Shown here: piece by piece, positions 18,964 to 56,737 of the stretch
Layout of the letters: each line of letters starts with the position of its first letter
How positions within the stretch are numbered: position 1 is the stretch's first letter
Virus record (IMG/VR): IMGVR_UViG_3300025141_000016
Span: 62,001-126,000 of that record
Reading direction: 5' to 3' (one strand)
Length of the DNA: 64,000 nucleotides
Notes under the pieces: generated by a model
Told to the model about the DNA's origin: nothing
The model's database searches: none
Seen by the model: the letters and a program-made list of their open reading frames with translations, nothing else
Translations under genes and position numbers: made by a program

Positions 18964-18993
18964 GGGGGGTTCAACTCCCCCTCTGTTCCAGTA
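18964..18993 (+). promoter_or_regulatory. Class E promoter-like motif, variant TTCAAC-N14-AGTA
   Basis: GGGGGGTTCAACTCCCCCTCTGTTCCAGTA upstream of 19026. Confidence 0.5.
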
Positions 18994-19025
18994 GAGGGGG
19001 GGAACCCCAAAGGAAGGAGCCTGAC

Positions 19026-19622
19026 ATGGGACAGCGAGGAAGGAAGCGTATCGAGGACAAGCACCCGGAACTGCTGGAGATGTTGGGCGTTCAGTCTGAC
19101 AAGGAACTCGCGGAGCAGTTCGGTTGCACGCCGGTCACCATCGGGAACGCCCGCCGTCGAGCAGGGCTCCCGTACCACCGAAGTCCGAGGACTCGGAGCA
19201 TCATCCATGGGATGAAGGAGGCCGAGAAGGATCTCCATATGGTCGTCGTTCCCCACCGCCTTACGGTTCGGGAGAGCGGCGAGGAACGTGTGGATGTGCT
19301 TCACGGCCATGACGGCGTTCGCGTCTACCATAAGGATGCGGTGGACTACCGGATCACGATGGGGATGACCGAAGACCTCCCTCACTTCCATTCGTGGGAT
19401 GAGTGCAAGAAATACCTGACCGAAGAACCGGGAGCCTTCCGCCCCTGTCTTCTCGACCTCTACATCGCTCGTCAGGTTTTCTCTTCGTCCTTTTCGGAGC
19501 CGTACTCTATTGCCCCGGACCCCACCGAGACGAAGGCCCTGGACAAGATTCGGGCAGCGGCAAAGGCAAACAAGCCGGTTCGATTGAGTGCCTCCGAGGT
19601 GCAGGCGCTCGTGAGGGTGTGA
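19026..19622 (+). CDS. Helix-turn-helix domain protein
   Basis: SDKELAEQFGCTPVTIGNARRRAGL. Confidence 0.65.
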   Translation: MGQRGRKRIEDKHPELLEMLGVQSDKELAEQFGCTPVTIGNARRRAGLPYHRSPRTRSIIHGMKEAEKDLHMVVVPHRLTVRESGEERVDVLHGHDGVRVYHKDAVDYRITMGMTEDLPHFHSWDECKKYLTEEPGAFRPCLLDLYIARQVFSSSFSEPYSIAPDPTETKALDKIRAAAKANKPVRLSASEVQALVRV

Positions 19623-19966
19623 TGTTTGAGCAGGATGCTGCCCGTCTCATTCGTGAGGCGGGCTGGAAGATTGTCCTCGGCCCCTTCTACAACACCAACC
19701 TCAGTCCGAAGGGTGTCCATGTCTGGTCCATCAAGTCGGTCCTCTCCAAGCAAGACCTCACAGCCCGAGGGATCAAGGCGACCAAGGCTTCCCCTCCGGG
19801 CTCCCAGAGGACCGTTCGGTTCCGAGGGGTGGTGGAAGATGGGGTACTGGTGTCTGTGGAGCATCTGACGAGTAGCGGGCGCAAGAAGCTGTCCCGTGGG
19901 GGTCCACGTCGGAAACGGCGCAGGACCAAGCCAAAGGGGGGTACTTCATTGGTGGAAGTCGGGTAA
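19622..19966 (+). CDS. Hypothetical basic protein
   Basis: ATG overlaps the upstream stop (TGATG); MFEQDAARLIREAGW... Confidence 0.55.
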   Translation: MFEQDAARLIREAGWKIVLGPFYNTNLSPKGVHVWSIKSVLSKQDLTARGIKATKASPPGSQRTVRFRGVVEDGVLVSVEHLTSSGRKKLSRGGPRRKRRRTKPKGGTSLVEVG

Positions 19967-20016
19967 CGAGAGGTGAGAGGAAACATGCGACCACCATCCG
20001 ACAAGCGAGGGGAACG

Positions 20017-20781
20017 ATGAGCACGCCTGACCCCGAGTGTTCCGAGTGCCATGGCACGGGACTCGTAGAACGGGATCCCACGCCCCCGCATCCTCCCTCT
20101 TTCTCACGGTGTGAGTGTGTCCTTCGCCAAGACATTCTGGCCAACGTCGAGCGTGGGATGACGGGTCTCTCCAGAGCCCCCGTCATTTCGGGGTCCGCGT
20201 TGGTGGGGCAGCACACCAACAACCTCTGGGTCACGGCTGACGATGATTTCTTGTCCCATCTCCGTCATGTGGCGGTGAGGCGACCAGCAACATGGTTGTT
20301 TCGCGTGGTGTCAGATGCGGAACTTGTGACTGCATGGCTCGCATCCATAGCCCTCAAAGGCGGCGAGATCATCGACCCCGATGCGTATATGGTGTCCACC
20401 AAGTACCTCACGGTCCCCGACCTTGTGGAGCCACCCGACCTCGTGGTTATCCGTATGGGGATCAAGGTGGCACGCAACGCGGCTGCATCCGAAGTGCTGG
20501 CCGAAGCATTGAACACGCGGCTCCATGCAGGTAAGCCGACGTGGTTGTGGGATGGCCCGATGCAGCCCCTTACGGTGGGGCACCTGTTCCACTCCCCCGA
20601 GGTTGAACGAGCACTGAATGGTTGGACGCGCCTGCGATCCCTTGCCCCCTCTACTTCGTCGGAAGGTGGGGGAGGGGAGGAGTCTGGGGGCACCCCGGAA
20701 CCCGGTGAGTTGGCCCCCCAACGGGAAACCACCAAGCCAGGATGGATGACCAACAAGACATTCCGAGGAAGTGACTCGTGA
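20017..20781 (+). CDS. Zn-finger protein, probable degenerate DnaC/IstB-like helicase loader
   Basis: CSECHGTG...CEC at the N-terminus; PDLVVI...EALNTRLHAGKPTWL resembles DnaC-like blocks; no Walker A; directly before DnaB. Confidence 0.5.
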   Translation: MSTPDPECSECHGTGLVERDPTPPHPPSFSRCECVLRQDILANVERGMTGLSRAPVISGSALVGQHTNNLWVTADDDFLSHLRHVAVRRPATWLFRVVSDAELVTAWLASIALKGGEIIDPDAYMVSTKYLTVPDLVEPPDLVVIRMGIKVARNAAASEVLAEALNTRLHAGKPTWLWDGPMQPLTVGHLFHSPEVERALNGWTRLRSLAPSTSSEGGGGEESGGTPEPGELAPQRETTKPGWMTNKTFRGSDS

Positions 20782-22256
20782 AGGTCTTGCTCCGCTCTAC
20801 ATTTCTGGACGGTCCTTCCGACGATGGTGACCTCTTTCTTCGGAACGCCCAGGCGCTTCGGGACAGCGGGCTGGGCTTTGAACTGGAAGAGGATGGGGTC
20901 ATCTGGTCCTACATCCAAGACTTCATCGCGCAGCACCACCACGTTCCTGCATCCTCCACTCTCCGGGGGCACTTTGAGCGGGTGAACCAAATACCGGTCA
21001 CTGACCGGCTCGACACCCTCTGCATAGAGCGACCTCGCACCCAAGGCGATTACCGTCAACTTCTCGACTCACGGGTGGAGGATCGCCGGATTCGGATTGT
21101 GGGGGAGGTGCTGCGGGAAGCCGCACGGATCGTGGACACTGGGGTCACCATCAAGGAAGGGCGCGAGGAGCGTATTCTCCGAGGCCCTGCTCATGCTGTG
21201 CGGTATGTCCTCGACAGGAGCCATGAGGTCATCACGCCTGTCACGGGAGTGCGGCTCTCTGGGGACGTGACCTCCGACGGGGACTCCTTTGTGAAGGAGT
21301 ATGAGCGTGTTGAGGCCGATCCCCTGGCGGGGATCGGGCAGTTCACGGGCATCCGGCAGATGGACGAAACGCTCAAAGGCGCGAAGCGGGGAGAACTGTG
21401 GACTCACGCTGCCTTCACAGGGGGCATGAAGTCCACGTTGGCGATGAACTGGCATTACAACCAAGCTGTCTACTACCGCCACTCCTCGGTCCTCTATTCA
21501 TTGGAGATGCCCTACCAGCAGGTACGCCGCATCTTGTACGCCATGCACTCCGGGCACGAGAAGTTCGCAGAGGTGCGGAAGACCCTCGGCATAGGGAGGA
21601 GTCTCGACTACGCCAAGATCCGCGACGGGGAGTTGAGCGAGGCAGGGAAGACCTTTTTGGTGAAGCATGTGGTCCCTGACTTCAATGACCCTGCCAACAC
21701 CTATGGGCACATCCACATCGAGGTGGCTGACCCCGACAAGTCCGACTTCACGATCAATGACCTACGGACTCGCAGCGAACTCCTCTACACCAAAGACCCA
21801 GCGATTCAGATGCTCACCATCGACCATGCGGGGCTCATGCAGTCGAGGGGGAAGTACCGCTCGACAACGGAACGACTGAATGAGGTGCTGCGTGACCTCA
21901 AACGCCTCTCCATGTCCTTCAACCGGGGCATGGGGATCGCTGTCGTTGCGTTGTTCCAGATCAGCCGAGAGGGATACAAGTCTGCTGTGAAGTCAGGTGG
22001 GCGGTACAACTTGACTCACCTCTCCTACGCCAACGAGGCGGAACGGTCGTCGGACGTGGTGACCGCAGCCTGGGTGGACACGGAACTCATGGAGTCAAAC
22101 CTCGTGAAGTTCCAGTGCTTGAAGTCACGGGACAACGCTCCTTTTGAGGACTTCTACTCGGGTGTCTTATGGCCATCCCGACGTATCTTCACCACGACGG
22201 ACGTGACCCCACAGCAAGCCCAACGGGTCGGCGCTGAAATCGACTTGGACATTTGA
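20778..22256 (+). CDS. dnaB: Replicative DnaB-like helicase
   Basis: TGIRQMD, Walker A-like AAFTGGMKS, YSLEM, IDHAGL, LFQISR, ERSSDVV, KSRD. Confidence 0.85.
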   Translation: MKVLLRSTFLDGPSDDGDLFLRNAQALRDSGLGFELEEDGVIWSYIQDFIAQHHHVPASSTLRGHFERVNQIPVTDRLDTLCIERPRTQGDYRQLLDSRVEDRRIRIVGEVLREAARIVDTGVTIKEGREERILRGPAHAVRYVLDRSHEVITPVTGVRLSGDVTSDGDSFVKEYERVEADPLAGIGQFTGIRQMDETLKGAKRGELWTHAAFTGGMKSTLAMNWHYNQAVYYRHSSVLYSLEMPYQQVRRILYAMHSGHEKFAEVRKTLGIGRSLDYAKIRDGELSEAGKTFLVKHVVPDFNDPANTYGHIHIEVADPDKSDFTINDLRTRSELLYTKDPAIQMLTIDHAGLMQSRGKYRSTTERLNEVLRDLKRLSMSFNRGMGIAVVALFQISREGYKSAVKSGGRYNLTHLSYANEAERSSDVVTAAWVDTELMESNLVKFQCLKSRDNAPFEDFYSGVLWPSRRIFTTTDVTPQQAQRVGAEIDLDI

Positions 22257-22257
22257 G

Positions 22258-22860: not shown

Positions 22861-22890
22861 ACGGGTACACGTCCCAAAGGAGATTGCCTC

Positions 22891-26283: not shown

Positions 26284-26352
26284 AGGGGGTCGCGGAGGTA
26301 GCAAACTTGGGTAGGTTGCCCATATCCACTCCCTATAAGAGAGGGGAAACCC

Positions 26353-26895: not shown

Positions 26896-26896
26896 G

Positions 26897-29305: not shown

Positions 29306-30399
29306 TGGGAAGAAAACGCATGACATGGAAGCAAGGGGCCTCCCTATCTATCGGGGACCGCACGATGCCCCTGGAAGCTGACCAGACAGCAGATGTGTCC
29401 TACGACCATCCCTTGATCGGGAGCACCATCGAGGTGTCGTGCATCGCTGGGGGCACCCTCAAAGACCTCCGAGGAAAGAAAGCCCAGGTGCTTGGGGTCA
29501 TCGCCCGGTTTGGGCAGGATGTGGGATACAAGGTGGATGTTGACGGGGTTACCCGGCACGGATCTACCAAAGACTTCTTTCTCGACCGTTGCGTGGTCGA
29601 GGACGCGCAGCCCCCAACCGCTACTTCGGCGGCTCTCCGCGAAGGGCTCTCCCATTGGGGTCAACAACGGGACTACTGGCACACTGACACCAGCGGTCTT
29701 GAAGCCCTCTGCTTTGATCTGGCCTCGGTGACCCCACGCGCTGCCGTCGAGGCTCATGGGTGGGGGTGGCAGTTCTCTGTCCCAGCCCCGATGCCAGGAG
29801 AGTTCGGGGTGGTTGTCTGTCCCGCCGCTCTCCATGAGAACTTTTGGACCACGACCGCCATGGTCTACCCCTACCGCGCCATCGTTGAAGAGGAACGGCT
29901 CCCCAATGAGGGCGCTGTCCTCTCCATGCCCTTCATTGATGATCACTGGGCACGAGTGTTCTCGTGGACGTATGCGGTTGCGACAAAGATGGCAGCCGAG
30001 GGGTTCCCGTGGGAACAGGCTGCTCGTGGAATCAAAGCCCGAGCGACAGCAACGGCCCAGGTTCTTGTCCCCCTGGTCAGCCGCACCCTTCAACGCGCCC
30101 TGGATGTTCGCTATGAGGTCACGGGGGAGCGGCCTTACGTTTCCGCCGTGTCAGCGGGGTTTTCAGTGGTGCGGCTCAAAGCAGGGACGGTTGGGCTGAC
30201 AGAGCCCCCCACTGACCGGCGACCATACACCGTCATGTCAATCTCGCCCTCGGTCGCCAAAGATCCCGAGTATCTGGAACAGTGTGTCATCCATGAGTGT
30301 GTCCACATCGCTGTGGCCTCGGAGGGGGGCGACCCCCACGGTCCCCTATTCATCGAGGTTTCCGAGAAGATGGGGTTGAAACCTGAACATAGGGATTGA
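29305..30399 (+). CDS. SprT-like zinc metalloprotease domain protein
   Basis: C-terminal VIHECVHIAV...PHGPLF. Start uncertain (29305 or later). Confidence 0.65.
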   Translation: MGRKRMTWKQGASLSIGDRTMPLEADQTADVSYDHPLIGSTIEVSCIAGGTLKDLRGKKAQVLGVIARFGQDVGYKVDVDGVTRHGSTKDFFLDRCVVEDAQPPTATSAALREGLSHWGQQRDYWHTDTSGLEALCFDLASVTPRAAVEAHGWGWQFSVPAPMPGEFGVVVCPAALHENFWTTTAMVYPYRAIVEEERLPNEGAVLSMPFIDDHWARVFSWTYAVATKMAAEGFPWEQAARGIKARATATAQVLVPLVSRTLQRALDVRYEVTGERPYVSAVSAGFSVVRLKAGTVGLTEPPTDRRPYTVMSISPSVAKDPEYLEQCVIHECVHIAVASEGGDPHGPLFIEVSEKMGLKPEHRD

Positions 30400-30457
30400 G
30401 GGGGGTGGGGGGTTGCCCCCATCTCCGTAAGAGGGTCCAGACGAAAGGACGGACCCC

Positions 30458-32926: not shown

Positions 32927-32942
32927 GTCAACACCTCCGACC

Positions 32943-32976
32943 CCTATACGGAGATAGGGGGGCGAGTTGAACCCCC
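32943..32976 (-). promoter_or_regulatory. Class E (putative early) promoter TTCAAC-N15-CGTA
   Basis: The reverse complement reads GGGGGTTCAACTCGCCCCCCTATCTCCGTATAGG, oriented with the minus-strand gene. Confidence 0.8.
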
Positions 32977-33028
32977 GTCGCCCAGGTTTTTTCAGAAAAC
33001 CTCTCGGACGACAGATGGGGCTGACCCC

Positions 33029-33962: not shown

Positions 33963-33997
33963 GGGGGGTTCAACTCGCCCCCCTATCTCCGTATGGG
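33963..33997 (+). promoter_or_regulatory. Class E promoter
   Basis: GGGGGGTTCAACTCGCCCCCCTATCTCCGTATGG. Confidence 0.8.
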
Positions 33998-34041
33998 GGT
34001 GAACCGCGTGACCCATGCCCCGTAGGGGGCCAGGAGCATCT

Positions 34042-34500: not shown

Positions 34501-34513
34501 CTTTCTTTCCCCA

Positions 34514-34548
34514 GGGGGGTTCAACTACCCCTGGTATCTCCGTATAGG
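34514..34548 (+). promoter_or_regulatory. Class E promoter
   Basis: GGGGGGTTCAACTACCCCTGGTATCTCCGTATAGG. Confidence 0.8.
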
Positions 34549-34616
34549 AGTGAGGCCCAAGCCTCCCTTCCCTTTTCCCACGAGCCCGACTGACGGGCCA
34601 ATGGAGACAAGACATT

Positions 34617-45092: not shown

Positions 45093-45574
45093 CCAAGCCT
45101 TCCCCCAGCCGTGTAGCCTCCCGTTACCGAGAGGCCGCGATCACCTTTCGGGATGAGAGTTCGCCCCGTGTGCAGTACGCCCGACGGTTCTCACTGTGTG
45201 ACTCGGAAGCAGACCCACCCCGCAAGCGTGAGTACCTGTTCACGGATGAGTACCGAACCCACAACCGCAAGACATACAAGCGGTTGAAGAAGCCGGTGCT
45301 GGAGAGCCGTGGGGTCACCGACCCTTGCGACGTTGCCTACATCGACTACGGCGGGGGCGGGAAAGACCTGTATCTTCATCTGGTGATCACGCGAGAAGAC
45401 CACCGAGGGAAAGGGCTCGCCACAAGGCTACTCAAAGAGTTCTACTCCAAGAAGGTGCCCAAGGGAGCGGTTGTGCGCTGGGGTCGCATTATGAACCCAA
45501 CCAGCATGGCTCTGTTTGAGAAGATGAAGAAAGCACGCCCCGATGTGGTTCACATGGGCGGCAAGTTCTACTGA
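45089..45574 (+). CDS. GNAT-family acetyltransferase with N-terminal PSPSRVASRY tag
   Basis: LYLHLVITREDHRGKGLATRLL; NPTSMALFEK. Confidence 0.75.
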   Translation: MTKPSPSRVASRYREAAITFRDESSPRVQYARRFSLCDSEADPPRKREYLFTDEYRTHNRKTYKRLKKPVLESRGVTDPCDVAYIDYGGGGKDLYLHLVITREDHRGKGLATRLLKEFYSKKVPKGAVVRWGRIMNPTSMALFEKMKKARPDVVHMGGKFY

Positions 45575-46488
45575 CTTGCTCGTAGTCGCCATTCCCCTGC
45601 TACCTCGCGGATGAGGCGCAGCATCCTGGCGATGAGGTTGGGGTTGGACTTGGTGAGTCGCGCAATCTCGGACTTCCGGTAGCCCTGGACCATCAGGCCA
45701 ACGCACTCATGGGAGAGGGTGGCGCACATCCCTCGTTCGGTGGCCCGACTCCCGACCATGGTCATCAGCCCATCCGTGAGGGTTTGGAGGTCTGTCTCGT
45801 CTTCCTGGGAGGGGCCGACTATGGCTATGTCTGCACCCGCAACGTCCTCTATTACATCATCGAGCCCTGGGACTCCGAAGACCTCGTTGCGCTCCAGGCG
45901 AGAGTACCGACGACGGTAGTTGGATACGATGCACCCACACACCATGTGGACATAGTGCCCGAAGGAACTCTTGCGGGGGTCAAAAGGGCACTTCCCACCA
46001 TTCCGCACAAGTAGGCCCTTGTAAATCTCTTGCAGCACATCGTCCGGGTCGTAGCCGTACTTGATGACGCGCCGACCGTATCCCGCATAGAACAGTTTTC
46101 GGACCTCGTGTCCCCGCTTCTCCAAGTCAATCCCCAAGGGGGCAACGGGAGCCTCAATGGAGAGGACACGGCTGGTGCGGATCATCGCCTTGGGTTTGAC
46201 AACCGTGAGGTCAGGACGATTCTTGAAAAGCCGGAGGGTGTCAATCGCAGGCTCGGGGGGCCGATAGGTTCCCTGGCGGAAGTAGCGATCAAAAGTGACC
46301 TTGGGATCACGGTGATGAGATCGAGGCTTGGGGTCTTGGTTGACCAACGCCATGATGGTCTGTCGAGCGGAGGGGTATCTCACCGATCCGTTGGGCCACG
46401 AGACGAGAAAACCATTGGTATCGGCCAACACGCGATGACCCCCATGTTCTGTGCGTGCGTAAAAGGTTCCCTCTGTCCTCATCAACAT
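45568..46488 (-). CDS. Phage-encoded sigma-70 ECF-like RNA polymerase sigma factor with N-terminal extension
   Basis: Region 2: DPDDVLQEIYKGLL...FDPRKSSFGHYVHMVCGCIVSNYRRR. Region 4 HTH: GYRKSEIARLTKSNPNLIARMLRLIR. Confidence 0.75.
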   Translation of the reverse strand: MLMRTEGTFYARTEHGGHRVLADTNGFLVSWPNGSVRYPSARQTIMALVNQDPKPRSHHRDPKVTFDRYFRQGTYRPPEPAIDTLRLFKNRPDLTVVKPKAMIRTSRVLSIEAPVAPLGIDLEKRGHEVRKLFYAGYGRRVIKYGYDPDDVLQEIYKGLLVRNGGKCPFDPRKSSFGHYVHMVCGCIVSNYRRRYSRLERNEVFGVPGLDDVIEDVAGADIAIVGPSQEDETDLQTLTDGLMTMVGSRATERGMCATLSHECVGLMVQGYRKSEIARLTKSNPNLIARMLRLIREVAGEWRLRASQ

Positions 46489-46585
46489 ACGATCTTCCTC
46501 CTCATCAGCGTAGATAGTGGTATCACAGTACCGACTTCCAGGGAAACCTTACCCCCTCATACAAGCCCTCAAAGGGGCGATGTGT

Positions 46586-46600
46586 CGATAGTGGTCTTAT
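46586..46600 (+). promoter_or_regulatory. Class L motif
   Basis: CGATAGtggtcTTAT upstream of 46676/47482. Confidence 0.55.
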
Positions 46601-46675
46601 ACCCCTCTGCGGGCAGAGAGGTGCGGACCATGTGCGCGAAATGCAGTAACGTACTGATCGGTTCCTGGCTTCCTG

Positions 46676-47479: not shown

Positions 47480-47481
47480 CC

Positions 47482-49344: not shown

Positions 49345-49446
49345 ACTGGGTGGCGGCCAACTTCAATCAGTACCGGAAGTTTCTGACCTGCTGACTCACC
49401 GGGCGGAACCTAACCTCCCAATAAAAAGGTAGGTTTTTCTTCTGGA

Positions 49447-49481
49447 GGGGGGTTCAACTCGGGCCGGTATCTCCGTATAGG
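49447..49481 (+). promoter_or_regulatory. Class E promoter
   Basis: GGGGGGTTCAACTCGGGCCGGTATCTCCGTATAGG. Confidence 0.8.
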
Positions 49482-49553
49482 CGTGAACCGTAGGGTGACC
49501 TACGCTCTTTACTCACCCCTTCCATGCTCCATTGAGGAGCCCCGGAGATCGTC

Positions 49554-49766
49554 ATGGGCCGCAAAATCCGCCGTCAACGTGCCAAGGGCAAACGGGCTGA
49601 CCGTATCCACGCCAGCATCAAGGCCCAGCGTGGGCTCGACAGGGCTGAACACTTCGCCAAGGGTGGCGATCTCGTTCAGTATTGGGGTGGACCCAAGACG
49701 GTGACGCGAAACCGCAAGCGGGATGCGTCCCGTAATGCGTGTCGCGTCACCGTGAAGGACTACTAA
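49554..49766 (+). CDS. Small basic hypothetical protein
   Basis: GGAGA RBS; R/K-rich, 70 aa. Confidence 0.65.
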   Translation: MGRKIRRQRAKGKRADRIHASIKAQRGLDRAEHFAKGGDLVQYWGGPKTVTRNRKRDASRNACRVTVKDY

Positions 49767-49780
49767 CCCCGGAGTCTTCT

Positions 49781-50167
49781 ATGTCCCCCACCACCGAAAT
49801 CAGTATCGCCTTCCTTCGCCGCATCTATGCCAAGGGAAGTCTCTCGATAACCGAGGCGGTGACCGCTTTTGATGACCGGTGGGGTGCCCTCCCCGAAGGG
49901 GGTGGCACCCTCAACTACCATCTCCAGTTCTCGCTGGCTCACTACCTGGGGGAACTGCCTTCCTACTCGCACCTGTCCCCCACAGTCCTCGTCGCTGCCC
50001 CCACCACGGACAAGCAACGCGAGGTGTTGAAGGTGTGGGAGGAAGGCACCGATGGCGGCAACCTCCCTGCCGACTTCGATTGGACCACCTACGAGTCTAT
50101 CCCTTACCGCTTCGCTCCAGGCTGGCGGCGACGGTACAAGACGATTGAGCCCTGTCCTTCCTGCTGA
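49781..50167 (+). CDS. Hypothetical protein
   Basis: ATG 49781 after GGAG. Confidence 0.6.
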   Translation: MSPTTEISIAFLRRIYAKGSLSITEAVTAFDDRWGALPEGGGTLNYHLQFSLAHYLGELPSYSHLSPTVLVAAPTTDKQREVLKVWEEGTDGGNLPADFDWTTYESIPYRFAPGWRRRYKTIEPCPSC

Positions 50168-50211
50168 CCTTTTGACCCCCGGACTCGCACCGAGCGAGCA
50201 TGGAGAGTTTC

Positions 50212-50718
50212 GTGGATACCAACGTCCTTCGCGGTGCGAAAATCCTTGCCATTGAGGGCATGGCCCCTTCCTCGGAAACCGTCACCCTTACGACCGACCG
50301 AGGGGTGCTGCGTCTGCACCACCATCAGGATTGCTGTGAATCCGTGGCGGTGGAAGACGTGACCGGTGACCCTGCCGACTTGATCGGTGCGATCATCCGT
50401 GACTTCCGCGAAGACACCAAGGACCACCCTGACACCAGTGAGTCCTGGGTCCAGATGTGGACGTTCTACAACATCGTGACGGACAAGGCTGATGCCCAGA
50501 TCCGTTGGTGCGGGGCCAGCAACGGCTACTACAGCATCTCTGTGAGCATGGAGTGGGAGACTACCCTTCCCCCCATCTCCAAGTGCCTGCCGCCCCCCTT
50601 CGCCGGGATCCGCAGGATTGACGAAGACGGCACCGCCCGGAACTACCAGGGCGACGTGCTCGTCACCCTCCCCCCAGAGTCGGTGAACAACATCCTCTCT
50701 GCCTATGACCTCTCGTGA
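50212..50718 (+). CDS. Conserved-type phage protein (HHQDCCE...SNGYYS) with shared C-terminal LPxPF domain
   Basis: HHQDCCESVAVED, WTFY, RWCGASNGYYS. GTG 50212 follows GGAG (alternative ATG 50200). Confidence 0.7.
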   Translation: MDTNVLRGAKILAIEGMAPSSETVTLTTDRGVLRLHHHQDCCESVAVEDVTGDPADLIGAIIRDFREDTKDHPDTSESWVQMWTFYNIVTDKADAQIRWCGASNGYYSISVSMEWETTLPPISKCLPPPFAGIRRIDEDGTARNYQGDVLVTLPPESVNNILSAYDLS

Positions 50719-50729
50719 TGGAGCCTCCC

Positions 50730-51500
50730 ATGACTGACCCCAAGCCCCGCTTGTCCGTCGCTCCATTGAACGAGGATCGACTCCGGCAGTACGTCCTCGA
50801 CATTCTGTCGGGTCAGGTGCTCACGAGCGACCAAGTTCGTGCTCGGGACATAGGCATGGTCTTCATGCCTCTGATCATGGGAGCCCTGTCTCCCCCGGAC
50901 GAGGTGATCGTCAAACACATGGGGAGTGCGACTCCCCCCGAAACCCTCGACGGGGATCCCCCCAAGCCGGAACATCCTGGCTACCCAGAGGGAGTAGGGG
51001 AACCTCCCACCAAACCTGTCCTGGGCAAGATCAATCCCCAGATCCTCTCTGACCTTGATTGGGGGGAGACTACGGAGATCGAGGTGAATGAAGCCAAGGC
51101 CATCGTGGAGGCCGGAAACTCCCGGCTGGTTCGGGAGTGGGACGCAGCCCTGATGGCGTGGGAACGCGCAATCGAGGCCGAGGGGAAGGTCCGTTGTGAG
51201 ATAGACGCGACCCATGAAGCTGCAATCGAGGCGTGGAAGGCCAAACTGGCCGTCCACACGGATCGCCAAGCCGAACGCCAATCTGCCCACGACGAGTGGG
51301 TGGCCCGTTTCGATGTGGTCTTTGACGAGTGGCGGAACAACATCGCCGTCGTCGCGGGCAACATGAAGGACACCTTTCCCCGGTCGATCAACGGCTACCC
51401 CATGTTCCATGCTATCGCACTCATCGGCCATGACGACTGGAAGCGCATCCGTGCTGCCGTCATCCGTGAACAAGATCGCGCCAAGACCTTGGAGGTCTGA
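50730..51500 (+). CDS. Hypothetical protein (Pro-rich plus coiled coil)
   Basis: Long ORF; PRSINGYPMF block. Confidence 0.65.
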   Translation: MTDPKPRLSVAPLNEDRLRQYVLDILSGQVLTSDQVRARDIGMVFMPLIMGALSPPDEVIVKHMGSATPPETLDGDPPKPEHPGYPEGVGEPPTKPVLGKINPQILSDLDWGETTEIEVNEAKAIVEAGNSRLVREWDAALMAWERAIEAEGKVRCEIDATHEAAIEAWKAKLAVHTDRQAERQSAHDEWVARFDVVFDEWRNNIAVVAGNMKDTFPRSINGYPMFHAIALIGHDDWKRIRAAVIREQDRAKTLEV

Positions 51501-51877
51501 TGTACGTCCGAGAAATCGAGCATGAGGATGGGTCAGTAACGGTCGAGAAATACACCCCTGGGAGCCCCCAGGAAGCCATGGCAGCTTTCAGCGACCTCTG
51601 GGCGATGGAATCCACCCATGGCCCCTACACCATATCAACGGTCTTTCTTGCGCTTGGCCCGTGCCCTTATGAGACGATGGTGTTTGTCGGGGATTCCAAT
51701 GCCGACAGAGAGATGGACCGCTACAGCACCCGAGCAGGAGCGATCAAGGGGCACCACCGGATCTCGTGTAAGTGGCGGGACATTTTCACGGCTAACCTTG
51801 CCCTGTTGGGGGAGGGTTTCTGGCTTCCTGTTGGAGAAGATTCTGCGGAGAAAACACCCACCACCGCTGAACTTTAG
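51500..51877 (+). CDS. Hypothetical phage protein (YETMVF...RYST...GH type)
   Basis: ISTVFL...YETMVF...RYSTRAGAIKGH; TGATG coupling. Confidence 0.65.
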   Translation: MYVREIEHEDGSVTVEKYTPGSPQEAMAAFSDLWAMESTHGPYTISTVFLALGPCPYETMVFVGDSNADREMDRYSTRAGAIKGHHRISCKWRDIFTANLALLGEGFWLPVGEDSAEKTPTTAEL

Positions 51878-51884
51878 TGCCCCA

Positions 51885-51919
51885 GGGGGGTTCAACTCGC
51901 CCCCCTATCTCCGTATAGG
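51885..51919 (+). promoter_or_regulatory. Class E promoter
   Basis: GGGGGGTTCAACTCGCCCCCCTATCTCCGTATAGG. Confidence 0.8.
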
Positions 51920-51977
51920 AGTGAGGCCCCCATCTATACCCTTTTCCAGCCCTGCATCGAGCAGGCAAGGAGCCCCT

Positions 51978-52469
51978 ATGACCTACCGAAATGTCGAGTA
52001 TCCCGAGGCTGTTGCCGCAGCTAATGAGGGACTTCCCTTCACGATTTGCTGGGAGTTCTCTGGTGCCAATGGCAAGAACAAATCCGGCACGTCCGACAAG
52101 TTCTGGCTGATTGAGCGCACCTGCAAAAACGGTGAGGTGTACCGACGGTTCGGCAAGAAAGGAGCCAACGGCCAGCGTCAACTGATTCCGAGTGTCGCGA
52201 GCGGGCTGCTCCAAGGTCGGGGAAAGGAAAAAAAGGGGTACGTCCTCTCCTTCGCTTCCGTTGTCGCTCCCGCTGGGCAGTCCGACCACCCCGACCCGAG
52301 GGTAAGGCCCCTGATCTCCAAGATGCTCCCTGCCCCTTTCTGCCACATCCGCATGGTCCATGAGGCACCGATTGGGACATGGAACGCCTATGACAGCGAA
52401 GGGAACGTCGTGGTCACCCTGGCTGCGGACACGGCAGCAGAAATCATCGCAACCTACACGCTGGCATAG
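51978..52469 (+). CDS. WGR-like domain protein with shared C-terminal LPxPF domain
   Basis: SDKFWLI...VYRRFGKKGANGQ...KEKKGY; AAGGAG RBS. Confidence 0.7.
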   Translation: MTYRNVEYPEAVAAANEGLPFTICWEFSGANGKNKSGTSDKFWLIERTCKNGEVYRRFGKKGANGQRQLIPSVASGLLQGRGKEKKGYVLSFASVVAPAGQSDHPDPRVRPLISKMLPAPFCHIRMVHEAPIGTWNAYDSEGNVVVTLAADTAAEIIATYTLA

Positions 52470-52477
52470 GAGCAAGC

Positions 52478-54526
52478 ATGTCCAAGAATCTCGACACCCT
52501 TGCTCTGGCCCAGCGTCTTCGTGAAGCCTCCGCTGCCTACTACAGCGGGGGCAAGCCCTCTATGTCCGATGCCGAGTTCGATGCACTGGAAGCCGACCTC
52601 CGCAAGCGTGACCCCAAGCATCCTGCGCTCGCAGAGGTGGGTGCGCCTCCGTCCTCCGGCTGGCCCAAGGTCACCCATCCCATCACCATGGGATCGCTGG
52701 CGAAGGTTCAGAACAATGCCGAGTTGGACTCCTGGGTCACCCCTCTTGTCCGCAACAGCAGAATCGGGGGATGGAACTCTAATGGGTCCAAACTCCGCGA
52801 AGGGAACCAGGGCTGGTGCGTCACCGAGAAGATGGACGGGATTTCCGTTCTCCTGACATACACGGACGGTGTTCTTGTCCGAGCCGCCACCCGTGGTGAC
52901 GGAACCACGGGGGAAGACATTACGCGCAACGTGCGAGTAATGAAGGGTGTCCCGGCCACGCTGCCAACGCTCCCTCGTGGGGACGTTCATATCCGTGGCG
53001 AGATCATCTGCAAGAAGTCCGACTTTCTCCGAGAGTTCGCGGCAGATGGGTACAGCAACCCCCGCAACACGGCTTCGGGAACCTCCAAGCGTCATAGCGG
53101 ATGGCAGAAGTGCCGCCACCTGACGGTCTACGCCTACAACCTGTTCGGAGCCGGTGTCCCTGCCGATGCCGACAAGCGCACTTCGGAGATGATTACCCTG
53201 GCGAAATGGGGGTTCAATGTCCCCTGGACCGAGGCGACCGCGTTTGAGGGAGGTGGGGGAACCACCTCGACCGACCGTATCCAGGCTTTCCACGACCTCT
53301 ACACCAGCGGTAAGCGTGAGTCGCGAGACTACGAGATAGACGGTCTGGTGGTGGAGGTGAACGACACGGCTTCCCGCGAATCCCTTGGCACGACCCCAGA
53401 TGGTATGCGTCCGAAAGGCGCAGTGGCGTACAAGTTCCCGCATGAAGCCCAGCAGACCACCCTGCGAAACATTCGTTGGCAGGTCGGCACGACGGGTCGC
53501 GTGACCCCTGTGGCCGAGTTCGATGCTGTGGACCTTGCGGGCGCGTCGGTCAAACAGGCCAGCCTCCACAACCTCGCCAACATCGAGAAGTTGACTAACG
53601 GTGCTGGGTTCATGGAGAACGCCACCATCCTCGTATCTCGGCGCAACGACGTAATCCCTTATGTCGAGGCGTTGCTGTCCCAGCATCCCCAGGAAGATGA
53701 GTTTGAGGCACCCCACGACTGCCCCGAGTGTGGGTTCGACTTGGCGATGGACGGGGAATACCTCGTCTGCGGTAACGGAGGCGACGGCCCAGGTGATCTG
53801 GGGTGCCCCGCACAAATCCTTGGTGGTATCCGACGCTGGATCAAGAAGATCGGTGTGCTCCACTTCGGGGACCGGCTCATTGAAGCGGTTGTCGAGGCAG
53901 GGATGGTCAAGACCATCCCCGACCTTTATCGGCTGGACGAACAAGCGATGGCTGCGCTTTCGCTCAACGGTCGTCGTGTCGGTGGGGCTGCAAAGCGGGC
54001 TCTGGGTTCACTTCATGCTCACAAGACCCTCCCCCTCGATACCTTCGTGGGATCGTTGGGCATCCCGTTGTGTGGTCGCCGCATGGTGGGGATGCTCATG
54101 GATGCTGGTATCTGTGACCTCAACATGCTGTCCGAGGCTACCGAGGCCCAACTGGCTCTCGCCCCTGGATTCGGCGTGGACAAGGCCAGGGCATTCCGGG
54201 TCGGGTTCGATGAGTGCAGGGACACCATCATTGGCCTGTACGCCGTCGGAGTCACCGTGGCTCCCCCCCAGCCCAAGACCGCTACCTCGGGGGTCCTCTC
54301 CGGTGTGTCCGTCTGCATGACAGGCTTCCGTGACAAGTCCATGGAGAACGCCATCAGTGCTGCCGGGGGGACTGTGAAGTCCAGCGTCAGCAAGGCTCTC
54401 GGATTGTTGGTCGCCAAAGACCCCAACAGCACGTCGGGGAAGGCGAAGAAAGCGCGGTCCCACGGCATCGAGGTCATTGACCCAGCCGAGATGTGGACAC
54501 GCCTGGGGGGTCAGGCCCAGCCTTGA
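52478..54526 (+). CDS. ligA: NAD+-dependent DNA ligase
   Basis: AYY...SDAEFD, EKMDG, TRGDGTTGEDIT, RGE, NPRN, DGLVV, AVAYKF, CPEC...C...C Zn finger, HhH, BRCT (VCMTG). Confidence 0.96.
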   Translation: MSKNLDTLALAQRLREASAAYYSGGKPSMSDAEFDALEADLRKRDPKHPALAEVGAPPSSGWPKVTHPITMGSLAKVQNNAELDSWVTPLVRNSRIGGWNSNGSKLREGNQGWCVTEKMDGISVLLTYTDGVLVRAATRGDGTTGEDITRNVRVMKGVPATLPTLPRGDVHIRGEIICKKSDFLREFAADGYSNPRNTASGTSKRHSGWQKCRHLTVYAYNLFGAGVPADADKRTSEMITLAKWGFNVPWTEATAFEGGGGTTSTDRIQAFHDLYTSGKRESRDYEIDGLVVEVNDTASRESLGTTPDGMRPKGAVAYKFPHEAQQTTLRNIRWQVGTTGRVTPVAEFDAVDLAGASVKQASLHNLANIEKLTNGAGFMENATILVSRRNDVIPYVEALLSQHPQEDEFEAPHDCPECGFDLAMDGEYLVCGNGGDGPGDLGCPAQILGGIRRWIKKIGVLHFGDRLIEAVVEAGMVKTIPDLYRLDEQAMAALSLNGRRVGGAAKRALGSLHAHKTLPLDTFVGSLGIPLCGRRMVGMLMDAGICDLNMLSEATEAQLALAPGFGVDKARAFRVGFDECRDTIIGLYAVGVTVAPPQPKTATSGVLSGVSVCMTGFRDKSMENAISAAGGTVKSSVSKALGLLVAKDPNSTSGKAKKARSHGIEVIDPAEMWTRLGGQAQP

Positions 54527-54556
54527 TCTCCGTAACTGCCCACATAGGAGGCAATC

Positions 54557-54847
54557 ATGTTGACATTCGCACGGGGTGACCCGTACACGGTGACGTTAGC
54601 CGTCACGAAATGCGGGATCCGAATGGAGAGCCCCGCCGTCCTACCCGGCGCAAAACTGACAGCCGAGGAAAGGGCCACGTTGCTCGACCATGGCTGGAAG
54701 ATGCACGAGGGGTTGTACTACCACCCCAACGGTGTGCGGAGCGGCTACTTCCACCGGCTGAAAGCACGTTCCAAGGCAGCAGCCAAGGCCCGTGAGGCCG
54801 AGGCCACCGAGGTTGAGGGCACCCCTCCCGAGGAAGATGGGTCATAA
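54557..54847 (+). CDS. Hypothetical protein
   Basis: AGGAGG RBS. Confidence 0.6.
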   Translation: MLTFARGDPYTVTLAVTKCGIRMESPAVLPGAKLTAEERATLLDHGWKMHEGLYYHPNGVRSGYFHRLKARSKAAAKAREAEATEVEGTPPEEDGS

Positions 54848-54857
54848 AAAGGCCCAG

Positions 54858-54891
54858 GGGGGGTTCAACTCCCCCACCTATCTCCGTATAG
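54858..54891 (+). promoter_or_regulatory. Class E promoter
   Basis: GGGGGGTTCAACTCCCCCACCTATCTCCGTATAG. Confidence 0.8.
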
Positions 54892-54940
54892 AACCGCATC
54901 CTTTTCCCTGTGCCCGACTGACGGGCCAACTGGAGAAACC

Positions 54941-55309
54941 ATGACCCGAGAAACCACCATCATCGAGCGCGGGACCGCTGCTCGTCGTCTCGTGGAGTCT
55001 GTCGATGAGCGTCGGCGTGAACGCGCCAACCGCATCGACGTGATCAACGCCACCGAGCGAGGGGACCGCCTCATCGCTACCGTCCGGTCGGAAGACAAGG
55101 CGAAGACCTACAACACCGTGATCTCCCTCGACGTGAGGGGACGGCGAGGTTGGGTGCGCTGTGACTGTGATGACAACCACCGACGGAACTTGCCCTGCAA
55201 GCACTCTGTTGCTGTTGCCAACCGCTACCGCGCTACGAAGCGCGAGGAACTTCTACGGCTCCGGGGGGATGCCGCCACCCAGGACACTCCAACCCCGGAA
55301 AAACCATGA
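54941..55309 (+). CDS. SWIM zinc-finger protein
   Basis: VRSE...YNTVI...CDCDD...PCKHSVAV. Confidence 0.8.
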   Translation: MTRETTIIERGTAARRLVESVDERRRERANRIDVINATERGDRLIATVRSEDKAKTYNTVISLDVRGRRGWVRCDCDDNHRRNLPCKHSVAVANRYRATKREELLRLRGDAATQDTPTPEKP

Positions 55310-55593
55310 TCCTCCAACGAGAATGGCTGTTGGCCCGCTTCGACTTCTACCGTTGCCCCAACAGCGAACGCATCTCGGCCTGTGTCAAAGACAGCACCGA
55401 TGACAAGCTGATGTGTGGCTGTGGGCAAGTCAACCCCATCGTCAAGGAAAGAGGCTACAGCGAGCCAATAACCAGTGGAATAGTCCACCATTGGGTGCGT
55501 GATCTCTCTCCTGCATCCGTAGACGAGTTCATGGTCTGGAGGGAGAAATGGGTCCAACTCATCAAATCCCGCCGTGGTGGGGGTGTGCGATGA
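55306..55593 (+). CDS. Hypothetical Cys-containing protein
   Basis: ATGA coupling; CGCG. Confidence 0.6.
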   Translation: MILQREWLLARFDFYRCPNSERISACVKDSTDDKLMCGCGQVNPIVKERGYSEPITSGIVHHWVRDLSPASVDEFMVWREKWVQLIKSRRGGGVR

Positions 55594-55883
55594 GAATGCT
55601 CCTACAACAAGCCCCTCGGATTCGCCTCGCCATTCTCTGCGAGGTGTGCGGGGAGGATGCTCCCAGCCTGAACGGGCTGGTGGAGGAAGACCAAGACGGC
55701 GCTCTCACGGCGAGGGCTTGGAAAGCCGAGAACGACGCTACCGAGATCGAATACCTCGTCTGGTTGGTCGCCAACGGTCATTGTCCTGCTTGCCACGGCA
55801 AGCGGTGGGGAGGCCAAACCCCCGATGACGTGATCACCAAATGGATGGCCCACTACAAACGGACCCGCACGGAGGGCATCTGA
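55590..55883 (+). CDS. Hypothetical zinc-ribbon protein
   Basis: CEVC...CPAC; ATGA coupling. Confidence 0.6.
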   Translation: MRMLLQQAPRIRLAILCEVCGEDAPSLNGLVEEDQDGALTARAWKAENDATEIEYLVWLVANGHCPACHGKRWGGQTPDDVITKWMAHYKRTRTEGI

Positions 55884-55908
55884 CCTTTTTCACCTCTCCC
55901 GATAAGGG

Positions 55909-55938
55909 AGGGGGGTCAACTCCTGGCTCGGTCGAGTA
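55909..55938 (+). promoter_or_regulatory. Class E variant promoter (GTCAAC-N14-AGTA) upstream of the ncRNA candidate
   Basis: GGGGGGTCAACTCCTGGCTCGGTCGAGTA; same variant geometry as 18964. Confidence 0.55.
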
Positions 55939-55944
55939 AGGGGG

Positions 55945-56695
55945 GCCAAGAGTTCTTTTACATCTCAAACGAATCTCAACACGCCTTTCGGGGCGTGGCA
56001 GAGTGAACCCTTGCTGACGGGTTCCCAAACCGATGTACCCTTGCCGGGTCGTTGGCTCCCTCGGGAGATAGGCAGAACCCCGATTGGGAAGGTGGCCTTC
56101 ACAGGTCATGCCGCCCAATCTGTGAGGGGGGACGAGTTATGCGGTGTGGAAACCGCGAGAACCGTCCAGTGTCCCGGCGCATGAGCCGACGTTCCACCGT
56201 CGGAGTGCTGCAAAGGGAAGTCCCGTACTTGTCGGTTCAACGGGACAACGGTTGCAGGGCACAAACCATGACGAAAGTCTTGGGAAGGGGGTCGTTCCCC
56301 AGAATCGGACTGCTGAATGCAGAAGCCTCTCTGGTCATCGGGGCAACTTGGTGGCCGTCCCGAAAGGGGGCAACTGGCGATCTTCCCAAGGGATCAAAGG
56401 TTGTCGTGTGAAGGGTTGGGGAAGGTACACTCCACAACCCGGAGCGCAGAATGTAGGCAGCAGTATCGCGTGCTGTTCCGTCGTAGGAGACTGCGAAGAA
56501 CAGGGAGGAACGCTGTGAACCGTTTTACTTACGGGTGTTCACACTCCTAACCCGAGAGGGGACAGGCTCAAAAGGCTTGGAGGTCACGGCATGGGAGCAG
56601 GCCGATGTGCTGCTTGTTTGTTCCCTTATGAGGGGGTCATCCGAAAGGGTGGCCCCCTCCCCCTTTCACAGTCGCCCGAGAGGGCGACTTTTTTT
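55945..56695 (+). ncRNA. Large structured non-coding RNA candidate (~750 nt)
   Basis: No credible CDS. More than 15 hairpins, with GAAA/GCAA/GAGA/UUCG tetraloops and many G-U pairs. Bounded by a promoter motif and an intrinsic terminator. Confidence 0.75.
56670..56695 (+). terminator. Intrinsic terminator
   Basis: AGTCGCCC-GAGA-GGGCGACT followed by a T tract. Confidence 0.88.
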
Positions 56696-56702
56696 CGTCC
56701 AG

Positions 56703-56737
56703 GGGGGGTTCAACTCGCCCCGGTATCTCCGTATAAG
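56703..56737 (+). promoter_or_regulatory. Class E promoter
   Basis: GGGGGGTTCAACTCGCCCCGGTATCTCCGTATAAG. Confidence 0.8.

What the first reader, a model, noticed from the sequence alone, without database searches (positions are those of the whole stretch)
18964..56737. Class E promoter family GGGGG-TTCAAC-N15-CGTA, with ECF-sigma-like architecture
Seen: seven near-identical intergenic copies (32943-32976 on the minus strand, 33963, 34514, 49447, 51885, 54858, 56703) have exact N15 spacing and the consensus GGGGGGTTCAACTc-N7-TATCTCCGTATAg. Two N14-AGTA variants lie at 18964 and 55909. Each points into the downstream gene, including the minus-strand one. Targets are accessory/repair genes and the ncRNA candidate, not structural genes. 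Established: ECF sigma promoters typically have a -35 ending in AAC and a -10 beginning CGT. Inference: an early/middle regulon read by a host ECF sigma or by the phage sigma at 45568-46488. An alternative is a DNA hairpin promoter, since G-run/C-run arms flank TTCAACT in some copies (e.g. CCAGGGG...CCCCTGG at 34511-34534).
Basis: partly seen in the sequence, partly recalled or inferred. Interest (0 to 1): 0.72.

Follow-up and report, generated by a model that had tools for sequence, protein, structure and literature searches.

The report
Huge-phage sigma-factor promoter family
A 34-base sequence that stands 23 times in front of non-structural genes of an uncultured marine huge phage is most likely a set of promoters read by the phage's own sigma factor together with the host's RNA polymerase: a familiar kind of phage gene control, here in a phage group that has not been studied.

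Summary
The window holds seven exact TTCAAC-N15-CGTA copies (0.08 expected), and the 297-kb phage record holds 23 copies. All 23 are intergenic and point at a downstream ORF with a Shine-Dalgarno site.

The element has three parts: an A/T tract, G6-TTCAACTC, and TATCTCCGTATAG after a variable 7-nt gap. Read as hexamers, this is GGTTCA-N17-CGTATA, the normal geometry of a sigma-70-family promoter.

The ORF at 45568-46488(-) is a sigma factor with sigma2 and sigma4 domains. This rests on a profile hit to a solved sigma-H and on structural matches, nearly all to sigma factors. It misses the Pfam and NCBIfam cut-offs and has an extra N-terminal domain. Its family has more than 590 members on huge-phage contigs and is almost absent from cellular genomes.

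At least seven relatives carrying this sigma have their own GGTT-N18/19-CGTA motif in front of genes. The CGTA block and sigma2 are conserved. The -35 block and sigma4 vary.

I conclude that these are promoters for the phage sigma (confidence 0.7). No start site is mapped. A host sigma and a hairpin mechanism are disfavoured but not excluded.

In passing: the variant copy at 55909 precedes a conserved, highly structured RNA of about 0.7 kb that appears in metatranscriptomes.

The parts
32939..32977 (-). Promoter copy upstream of the 69-aa ORF 32717-32926(-)
   Evidence: Exact TTCAAC-N15-CGTA. The ATG lies 20 nt after CGTA and has a GGAGG site.
33963..34001 (+). Promoter copy upstream of the AAA_33 kinase-like gene 34042-34500
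   Evidence: It lies in a divergent intergenic region, so no same-strand gene stands upstream.
34514..34552 (+). Promoter copy upstream of the 376-aa ORF 34617-35747
   Evidence: (63 bits).
49447..49485 (+). Promoter copy upstream of the 70-aa ORF 49554-49766
   Evidence: It lacks the G-run/C-run hairpin (stem of 2 bp).
51885..51923 (+). Promoter copy with the best matrix score, upstream of ORF 51978-52469 and the NAD-dependent DNA ligase 52478-54526
   Evidence: (65.7 bits). In relative L040 the ligase also stands behind that phage's own motif.
54858..54896 (+). Promoter copy upstream of the SWIM-finger ORF 54941-55309
56703..56741 (+). Promoter copy upstream of the metallophosphatase gene 56758-57528
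   Evidence: It directly follows the terminator-like hairpin 56670-56689 and its T7 run.
18964..18998 (+). Variant copy (GGGGGGTTCAAC-N14-AGTA) upstream of the HTH-like ORF 19026-19622
55909..55942 (+). Variant copy (GGGGGGTCAAC-N14-AGTAAGGGG) upstream of the conserved structured RNA
   Evidence: Homologous RNAs in four other phages are each preceded by that phage's own motif version in the same orientation.
30398..30435 (+). Truncated copy: G-run, TTG, C-run, then ATCTCCGTAAGAG, lying 28 nt before ORF 30458-31822
   Evidence: The -35 block is shortened. Function is uncertain.
45568..46488 (-). Candidate cognate sigma factor, 306 aa: N-terminal beta-rich domain 1-75, sigma2 at about 118-200, sigma4 at about 226-306
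   Evidence: The family profile hits PDB 3mzy sigma-H at E 7e-5. AF2 mean pLDDT is 82.6. Foldseek top matches are nearly all sigma factors, and all 50 VIA-align rows are sigma factors. No Class E copy lies upstream of the gene.
55948..56662 (+). Conserved structured RNA of about 0.7 kb, a target of the variant promoter
   Evidence: RNA-library contigs cover 56003-56590 only. It is 82% identical over 709 nt to a phage whose sigma is 50% identical. RNAalifold predicts 218 pairs, 41 of them compensatory. There is no Rfam match.
56670..56696 (+). Terminator-like hairpin plus T7 run between the RNA and the next promoter copy

Best explanation
These are promoters of a phage-specific regulon. The host's core RNA polymerase, carrying the phage-encoded 306-aa sigma factor (45568-46488, minus strand), would bind the element. 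Sigma4 would read the -35 block (G-run plus GGTTCA(AC)). Sigma2 would read the -10 block (CGTATA, within TATCTCCGTATAG) 17 bp downstream. The A/T tract about 20 bp upstream of TTCAAC may act as an UP-like contact for the alpha subunits. Transcription would start within about 10 nt after CGTA.

The sigma gene has no such promoter of its own. The regulon should therefore switch on only after the sigma is made, which would make it delayed-early or middle. It drives nucleic-acid repair and accessory genes and one large non-coding RNA.

Shown: the sequence family, its placement, the sigma fold, and co-occurrence of motif and sigma across phages. Inferred: which sigma reads it, the start site, the timing, and the role of the A/T tract.
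For: (1) There are 23 copies against about 0.3 expected by base composition (my estimate). Matrix scores are bimodal.
(2) All 23 are intergenic and co-oriented. An ORF start with a Shine-Dalgarno site lies 19-109 nt after CGTA in 22 copies. The two shortest leaders leave only about 7 nt between CGTA and the Shine-Dalgarno site.
(3) Six copies are the first element of a divergent intergenic region. In relative L036, back-to-back copies stand 37 bp apart and share one A/T tract. It is therefore a DNA element, not an RNA leader.
(4) A spacing scan shows sharp peaks. GGTT-N19-CGTA occurs 23 times in this genome against 3-12 at other spacings. GGTT-N18-CGTA occurs 33 times in 36 relatives' loci against 6-20 at other spacings. 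A reversed-halves control shows no peak at N18 or N19.
(5) The ORF is a sigma factor. The profile hit to sigma-H 3mzy spans sigma2 to sigma4. VIA-align gives Z 9.4 and 8.4 for sigma4 and 8.3 for sigma2, and all 50 rows shown are sigma factors.
(6) The sigma family has more than 590 members on phage contigs up to 618 kb. Only one hit turned up in 185,579 species genomes.
(7) Relatives with 34-67% identical sigma each have their own two-block motif before genes: G001, L036, L035, L038, L040, L041 and L053.
(8) CGTA and sigma2 are conserved (78% mean identity). The -35 block and sigma4 vary (31%).
(9) No beta or beta-prime homologue of a multisubunit polymerase is in the record, and the controls for that search rang.
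(10) AAC in the -35 block and CGTA in the -10 block are what ECF sigmas such as B. subtilis sigma-W read (PMC5758882).
Against: - No start site has been mapped. No public RNA run covers the target coding genes.
- The sigma misses the Pfam and NCBIfam cut-offs (E about 0.035).
- The link between sigma and motif is correlative only.
- A second sigma-like protein, made of two sigma4-type domains, lies at genome 271749-272357. Host sigmas cannot be excluded either.
- The record is only 67% complete by CheckV, so an unseen polymerase is possible.
- The conserved G-run and the C-rich spacer, which pair in 16 of 22 copies, are not explained by sigma contacts alone.
- The near-identity of 34 bp is higher than most sigma regulons need.
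Confidence: 0.7

Rival explanations
1. The motif is read by a host alternative (ECF-type) sigma factor that the phage exploits, not by the phage sigma.
For: TTCAAC-N15-CGTA matches the ECF pattern of AAC plus CGT, and CGTA is the sigma-W type -10 (PMC5758882). The host is unknown, so its sigmas cannot be checked.
Against: The motif core follows the phage sigma family across phages with 44-65% GC, which probably have different hosts. The -35 block changes from phage to phage along with the phage sigma4. The 20-base composite motif is absent from 185,579 species genomes. ECF regulons are normally stress-gated, which would be a poor basis for an obligatory phage programme (my inference).
Confidence: 0.1
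2. The motif is a promoter for a different phage-encoded enzyme or factor. Candidates are a single-subunit T7- or N4-like polymerase, possibly using the G-run/C-run DNA hairpin, or the two-sigma4-domain protein at genome 271749-272357.
For: CCGTATAGGAG and CCGTATAGAAG resemble the T7 and SP6 promoter cores (from my memory of those sequences). 16 of 22 copies can form a perfect stem of 5 bp or more around TTCAAC. The 34-bp near-identity is typical of phage polymerase promoters. The record is incomplete.
Against: No PF00940 match was found, although the control for that search was silent. The two conserved blocks are separated by a variable 7-nt gap, unlike the contiguous T7-type promoters. Hairpin loops are 6-15 nt, against 3 nt in N4. 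Six copies have 4 bp or fewer, and two otherwise perfect copies have 2 bp. Relatives show no consistent hairpin. The second sigma-like protein has no sigma2 domain.
Confidence: 0.1
3. The host primary sigma reads TTCAAC-N17-TATAGG, helped by a phage activator bound at the G-run/-35 block, as in T4 MotA-type sigma appropriation.
For: The spacing of 17 bp is optimal for sigma-70. An A/T tract lies where an UP element would.
Against: The last position of the would-be -10 hexamer is G or A, not the near-invariant T. A sigma-70 consensus scan finds no site at all in 45000-58000. In relatives the conserved block is CGTA, not TAnnnT.
Confidence: 0.06
4. It is not a promoter. It could be an operator for a repressor, a recombination or homing site, or a repeated mobile sequence.
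For: The conservation is very high, and the hairpin potential is unexplained.
Against: Orientation towards gene starts is strict in 23 of 23 copies. The distance to starts is narrow, the two blocks keep fixed spacing, and the same architecture with different sequence appears in relatives. A distinct palindrome family, GTGAC(A/T)GTCAC, looks far more like operators.
Confidence: 0.04

Closest known systems
ECF (group 4) sigma promoters, e.g. Bacillus subtilis sigma-W (TGAAAC-N16-CGTA)
   Same: The -35 block ends in AAC and the -10 block is CGTA, with spacing inside the 14-17 bp range reported for ECF sigmas (PMC5758882). The candidate sigma has only sigma2 and sigma4 domains.
   Different: The sigma is phage-encoded and has an extra 75-aa N-terminal domain. 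It misses the ECF HMM cut-offs, and its gene has no autoregulatory copy of the motif. AAC is not conserved in relatives, where the shared core is GGTT-N18/19-CGTA. The G6 run and the TATCTC stretch are additional conserved positions.
Phage-encoded sigma factors that redirect host RNA polymerase (SPO1 gp28 and gp33/34, T4 gp55, phiEco32 gp36; 'group 2' jumbo phages that lack their own polymerase but encode sigma factors)
   Same: The logic is the same. The record shows no multisubunit RNA polymerase subunit, and the phage has its own sigma and its own highly conserved promoters for a temporal gene class (PMC7824862 and PMC4331800 for context).
   Different: This sigma family is not matched by the PHROGs or Pfam sigma models. 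The promoter has both -35 and -10 blocks, whereas T4 late and phiEco32 promoters have a -10-like element only (my knowledge).
N4 virion-polymerase hairpin promoters and T7-type single-subunit polymerase promoters
   Same: A long, nearly invariant sequence with hairpin potential around the upstream block in most copies. CGTATAG(G/A)AG resembles the T7 and SP6 initiation region.
   Different: No such polymerase was found. The loops are 6-15 nt rather than 3. The hairpin is missing in some copies and in relatives. The conserved sequence is split by a variable gap.

Membership tests
Bacterial sigma-70-family promoter | Intergenic position, oriented towards a downstream gene | tested here: met
   All 23 copies are intergenic and co-oriented. 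ORF starts lie 19-109 nt after CGTA in 22 copies.
Bacterial sigma-70-family promoter | Two recognition blocks at a fixed spacing of about 16-18 bp between hexamers | tested here: met
   GGTTCA-N17-CGTATA in this genome. The spacing scan peaks only at N19 (own genome) and N18 (relatives) between GGTT and CGTA.
Bacterial sigma-70-family promoter | Transcription start a few nt downstream of the -10 block | not testable with these tools
   No RNA run holds the target coding genes. RNA contigs downstream of the 55909 variant begin at 56003-56004, but contig ends are not start sites.
ECF (group 4) sigma factor (for ORF 45568-46488) | Sigma2 and sigma4 domains only, with no sigma3 or sigma1.1 | tested here: met
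   In the AF2 model, helices 122-199 and 227-304 are joined by a linker of about 25 aa. Domain matches: RpoE sigma2 at Z 8.3, and CnrH, SigR and sigma-H sigma4 at Z 7.8-9.4. An extra N-terminal domain is present.
ECF (group 4) sigma factor (for ORF 45568-46488) | Scores above the family model cut-offs (Pfam Sigma70_r2, Sigma70_r4_2, Sigma70_ECF; TIGR02937) | tested here: not met
   Sigma70_r2 gives E 0.037 and 12.4 bits. Pfam gives nothing. TIGR02937 gives E 0.035 and 13.7 bits against a cut-off of 42.9. Only a profile of the family reaches a solved sigma-H, at E 7e-5.
ECF (group 4) sigma factor (for ORF 45568-46488) | Target promoters with AAC in the -35 block and CGT in the -10 block | tested here: met
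   TTCAAC-N15-CGTA in 21 copies. AAC is not kept in relatives: GTTAAAA, GGTTCC, GGTTGGAGC.
ECF (group 4) sigma factor (for ORF 45568-46488) | Autoregulation and a co-encoded anti-sigma factor | tested here: not met
   No Class E copy lies in the 200 bp upstream of the sigma gene. Neighbouring ORFs have no family match. An anti-sigma factor was not specifically sought.
N4-type hairpin promoter | Conserved DNA hairpin (5-7 bp stem, 3-nt loop) plus a virion polymerase gene | tested here: not met
   Stems are 2-7 bp and loops 6-15 nt. Six of 22 copies have 4 bp or fewer. There is no PF00940 match, but that search had no working control.
Primary sigma-70 promoter | A -10 hexamer TAnnnT with T at the last position | tested here: not met
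   The hexamer after CG is TATAGG, TATAAG, TATGGG or similar. The consensus scan finds 0 sites in 45000-58000.

The most novel reading that the evidence does not exclude
A large clade of uncultured huge phages carries a private sigma/promoter system. It consists of an N-terminally extended, ECF-like sigma family that is almost absent from cells, plus GGTT-N18/19-CGTA promoters. The -35 block and sigma4 have diversified phage by phage, giving a natural set of mutually orthogonal sigma/promoter pairs. In this phage and its nearest relatives the system also drives a previously undescribed, highly structured RNA of about 0.7 kb. In four metatranscriptomes that RNA was the only part of the 5.8-kb stretch examined to be matched.
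Probability: 0.45. Interest if true: 0.65.

Novelty: new member of a known kind. Interest (0 to 1): 0.45.

Why it matters
If correct, the motif marks one temporal class of genes in a 300-550 kb uncultured marine phage. It also gives a rule, GGTT-N18/19-CGTA, for annotating transcription units in a whole clade of huge phages. The function of the more than 590-member protein family was previously named only by a few automatic 'sigma24' labels.

The family could supply compact, orthogonal sigma/promoter pairs for synthetic biology, as cellular ECF sigmas have. The mechanism itself, a phage sigma redirecting host polymerase, is textbook, so the surprise is modest.

The more unusual item is the structured 0.7-kb RNA behind the variant promoter, which deserves its own study.

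Tried and rejected
- Complex prediction with sigma residues 118-306 and 50 bp of promoter DNA was not folded. It gives no evidence either way.
- No similar record exists in the phage collection.
- There are no Rfam families or tRNAs in the window.
- The PF00940 search found nothing, but its control rang nowhere, so it is uninformative.
- RNA runs were found only through a 'related protein' and hold no transcripts of the target coding genes.
- The 552-kb metagenome contig that carries the identical RNA region could not be searched.
- The two-sigma4-domain protein was not found in four relatives. All four are 9-46% complete, so this is uninformative.
- The motif of relative L026 could not be counted in its full 258-kb record, which is not held.
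- I considered that the RNA block TGTTCCGTCGTAGGAG mimics the promoter -10 block, as 6S RNA mimics a promoter. I rejected this because the block is simply one arm and loop of a conserved hairpin.
- I considered that the upstream T-runs are terminator tails. This holds for a few copies (e.g. 56670-56696). However, A-runs and T-runs at the same position without hairpins are more common.
- I considered CTCC-GTATA-GGAG as an RNA hairpin. It is not kept in copies with GAAG, TAAG or GGGG.
- The single motif match in a 37%-GC contig (G002) is probably chance.

Full report
**Observation.** Shuffles give 0.08 expected. The two N14-AGTA variants at 18964 and 55909 and the CCAGGGG/CCCCTGG arms at 34511-34534 are also there.

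The window is bases 62001-126000 of a 297,104-bp IMG/VR virus record with 59.5% GC. CheckV estimates it to be 67% complete. It is a tailed phage, with Baseplate_J, a beta-helix fibre, family A DNA polymerase and NAD-dependent ligase. A second sample holds it at 99.97-100% identity, and it occurs in marine and vent metagenomes.

Genome-wide there are 21 exact copies, one with TTCAAA and one with a 1-nt insertion. A weight matrix separates them cleanly from everything else. The 22 copies score 41-66 bits, the insertion copy scores 22.5, nothing else exceeds 12, and the shuffled maximum is below 0. It is the most repeated element of the intergenic DNA.

**Anatomy.** Aligned, the copies read as follows:
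- an A/T-rich patch,
- about 8 variable nt,
- GGGGGG-TTCAACTC,
- 7 variable, mostly C-rich nt,
- TATCTCCGTATAG,
- and often (G/A)AGTG.

A run of four or more A or T starts 18-22 nt before TTCAAC in 13 of 23 copies. Only a few of these runs are tails of real terminator hairpins, for example 56670-56689 plus T7. Written as hexamers the element is GGTTCA-N17-CGTATA, which is standard sigma-70-family geometry.

**Placement.** All 23 copies lie in the 15.6% of the genome that my rough gene calls leave non-coding, and all point at a co-directional ORF. In 22 copies the start codon has a Shine-Dalgarno site and lies 19-109 nt after CGTA. In the two shortest leaders the Shine-Dalgarno site begins 8-9 nt after CGTA, so any start site must lie within about 7 nt of CGTA there.

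Six copies are the first element of a divergent intergenic region. In relative L036 two copies stand back to back, 37 bp apart, around one shared A/T tract. This excludes an RNA-leader element transcribed from upstream.

The genes behind the copies include an AAA_33 kinase, a metallophosphatase, a SWIM-finger protein, a weak WGR-like ORF followed by the ligase, a MoxR-type AAA+ ATPase, a VWA protein and several DUFs. None is structural.

**Who reads it.** The record has no beta or beta-prime homologue, and the controls for that search rang.

The ORF at 45568-46488(-) gets only weak single-sequence hits to sigma models (E about 0.035). It belongs, however, to a family of more than 590 proteins of about 300 aa found on contigs up to 618 kb. 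A profile of 33 members matches the solved sigma-H of Fusobacterium (3mzy) from region 2 to region 4 at E 7e-5.

The AlphaFold model has mean pLDDT 82.6. It shows a small beta-rich N-terminal domain, a sigma2 helix bundle (about 118-200), a short linker and a four-helix sigma4 (226-306). Foldseek's top matches are nearly all sigma factors, mostly ECF. Domain-wise alignment gives Z 9.4 (3mzy), 8.4 (CnrH, rmsd 1.9 Å) and 7.8 (SigR region 4) for sigma4. It gives Z 8.3 (RpoE) for sigma2. So it is a sigma factor with ECF-like two-domain architecture plus an N-terminal extension.

The family is almost absent from 185,579 species genomes. The single hit is on a 3.4-kb contig binned with an archaeal MAG. 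No Class E copy precedes the sigma gene.

**Comparative test.** Relatives that carry this sigma have their own version of the element in front of genes.

| Relative | Sigma identity | Motif | Copies |
|---|---|---|---|
| G001 | 66% | GTTCAA(C/A)...TTCTCCGTAT | 4 |
| L026/L036 | 67% | A/T tract...CCGTTAAAA-N11-(C)TTCCGTAAGTA | 5, in divergent pairs |
| L035 | 63% | GGTGGTTGGAGC...TCCCGTA | 2-6 (2 exact, up to 6 with the -35 block) |
| L038/G003 | 50% | GGGGGTTCC-N16-CGTA | 8-10 |
| L040 | 50% | GGGTTCCC...GACGTAA | 6 |
| L041 | 47% | GGGTTCT...GGCGTAAC | 4 |
| L053 | 34%, 44% GC | GGTTG-N17-CCGTATA | 4 |

In L040 and L041 the copies lie 19-24 nt before ATGs with Shine-Dalgarno sites, including the ligase.

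An unbiased spacing scan supports this. GGTT-Nx-CGTA peaks only at x=19 in this genome (23 against 3-12). It peaks only at x=18 in 36 non-redundant relatives' loci (33 against 6-20). A control with reversed halves shows no peak at N18 or N19.

Within the sigma family, sigma2 is 78% identical on average to the window's protein and sigma4 only 31%. This parallels the conserved CGTA block and the variable -35 block. It is hard to reconcile with a host sigma, since these phages have 44-65% GC and probably different hosts. The composite motif has no exact match in the species genomes.

**Rivals.**
- *Hairpin promoter.* 16 of 22 copies can pair the G-run with the C-rich spacer (5-7 bp, loops 6-12 nt). 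Six copies have 4 bp or fewer, including two otherwise perfect copies with 2 bp. Relatives show no consistent stem. I cannot explain why the spacer is C-rich.
- *T7-like polymerase.* CGTATAG(G/A)AG recalls the T7 and SP6 cores. However, the conserved sequence is split by a variable gap and no such polymerase was found. That search had no working control, and the genome is incomplete.
- *Primary sigma plus activator.* The would-be -10 hexamer lacks the final T, and a consensus scan finds nothing.
- *Second sigma-like protein.* The protein at genome 271749-272357 has two sigma4-type domains and no sigma2. It remains a possible partner or alternative reader.

**RNA evidence and a by-product.** No RNA run holds the phage's coding genes. 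I laid four marine and vent metatranscriptomes on 51800-57600. They gave contigs only on 56003-56590, several of them identical to the window. This is the gene-less gap between the 55909 variant and the terminator at 56670.

This region (55948-56662) is 82% identical over 709 nt to phage G003, whose sigma is only 50% identical. Further versions lie on metagenome contigs. RNAalifold on five versions predicts 218 pairs, 41 of them with compensatory changes on both sides. It also predicts many G-U pairs, which would be mismatches on the other strand. There is no Rfam match.

Each homologue is preceded by its own phage's motif version in the same orientation:
- G003 and L092: GGGGGGTTCC-N16-CGTAGAGG
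- L090: GGGGGGTTGAAA-N13-GGTAAGGGG
- L085: GGGGGGCAAC-N14-CGGTATTAG

The 55909 variant is therefore a conserved functional position, and the DNA behind it is present in RNA libraries. The contig ends at 56003-56004 coincide with a variable hairpin and should not be read as a start site.

**Comparison and novelty.** The element works like an ECF-type promoter. AAC and CGTA are the sigma-W pattern, and the spacing is within the 14-17 bp reported for ECF sigmas (PMC5758882). The system works like other phage sigma takeovers in jumbo phages that lack their own polymerase (PMC7824862).

As to membership, the sigma meets the ECF architecture and promoter criteria. It fails the sequence cut-offs and the autoregulation criterion, and it has an extra domain. 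I therefore call it ECF-like rather than ECF. It is a new member of a known kind. The clade-wide rule GGTT-N18/19-CGTA and the uncharacterised sigma family are the new parts.

**Limits.** The link between sigma and motif is correlative. Start sites, timing and host are unknown. The gene calls are my own rough ones. The genome is incomplete.

Noticed in passing
window 55948-56662 (+): A conserved, highly structured RNA of about 0.7 kb with no Rfam family. It is the only part of 51800-57600 found in four metatranscriptomes. It is 82% identical to a phage whose sigma protein is only 50% identical. Of 218 predicted pairs, 41 show compensatory changes.
   Followed up: partly
L089 and L087 (metagenome contig Ga0080013_1000001, 552,571 bp): This contig carries a region identical to the window's RNA locus, so it may be the complete genome of this phage. 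A second, partial copy of the RNA's 3' part lies at the end of the 1.5-kb stretch fetched as L087. It could be a terminal repeat, but the stretch's place in the contig is not known.
   Followed up: no
L030:848-3138 and L030:12670 (genome 200848-203138 and 212670, outside the window): Nine sites of the 11-bp palindrome GTGAC(A/T)GTCAC lie in intergenic DNA. Four of them stand in tandem just upstream of a Class E copy. They look like operator sites or iterons.
   Followed up: no
L002:1366-1974 (genome 271749-272357, +): A 202-aa protein with two sigma region-4-type HTH domains and no sigma2 (Sigma70_r4 E 6e-15; TIGR02937 64 bits). It may be a second transcription factor of the phage.
   Followed up: partly
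window 30398-30435 (+): A truncated copy of the element: G-run, TTG, C-run, then ATCTCCGTAAGAG, lying 28 nt before ORF 30458-31822.
   Followed up: no
window 46513 and 46587 (+), upstream of the sigma gene: Two copies of GATAGTGGT lie in the 200-bp divergent region between the sigma gene and ORF 46691-47479. Only four copies exist in the genome. They may be part of the sigma gene's own control region.
   Followed up: no
genome 224540-224660 (outside the window): A tandem 15-nt repeat, CTGCTCCCGAGGAAC, about eight units long. My gene calls leave it out, but it is probably a coding proline/glutamate-rich repeat.
   Followed up: no
L093 (WJJK01000286.1, 3.4-kb contig of a Candidatus Altiarchaeales MAG): This is the only hit of the phage sigma family in 185,579 species genomes. 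It is probably a phage fragment binned with the MAG.
   Followed up: no
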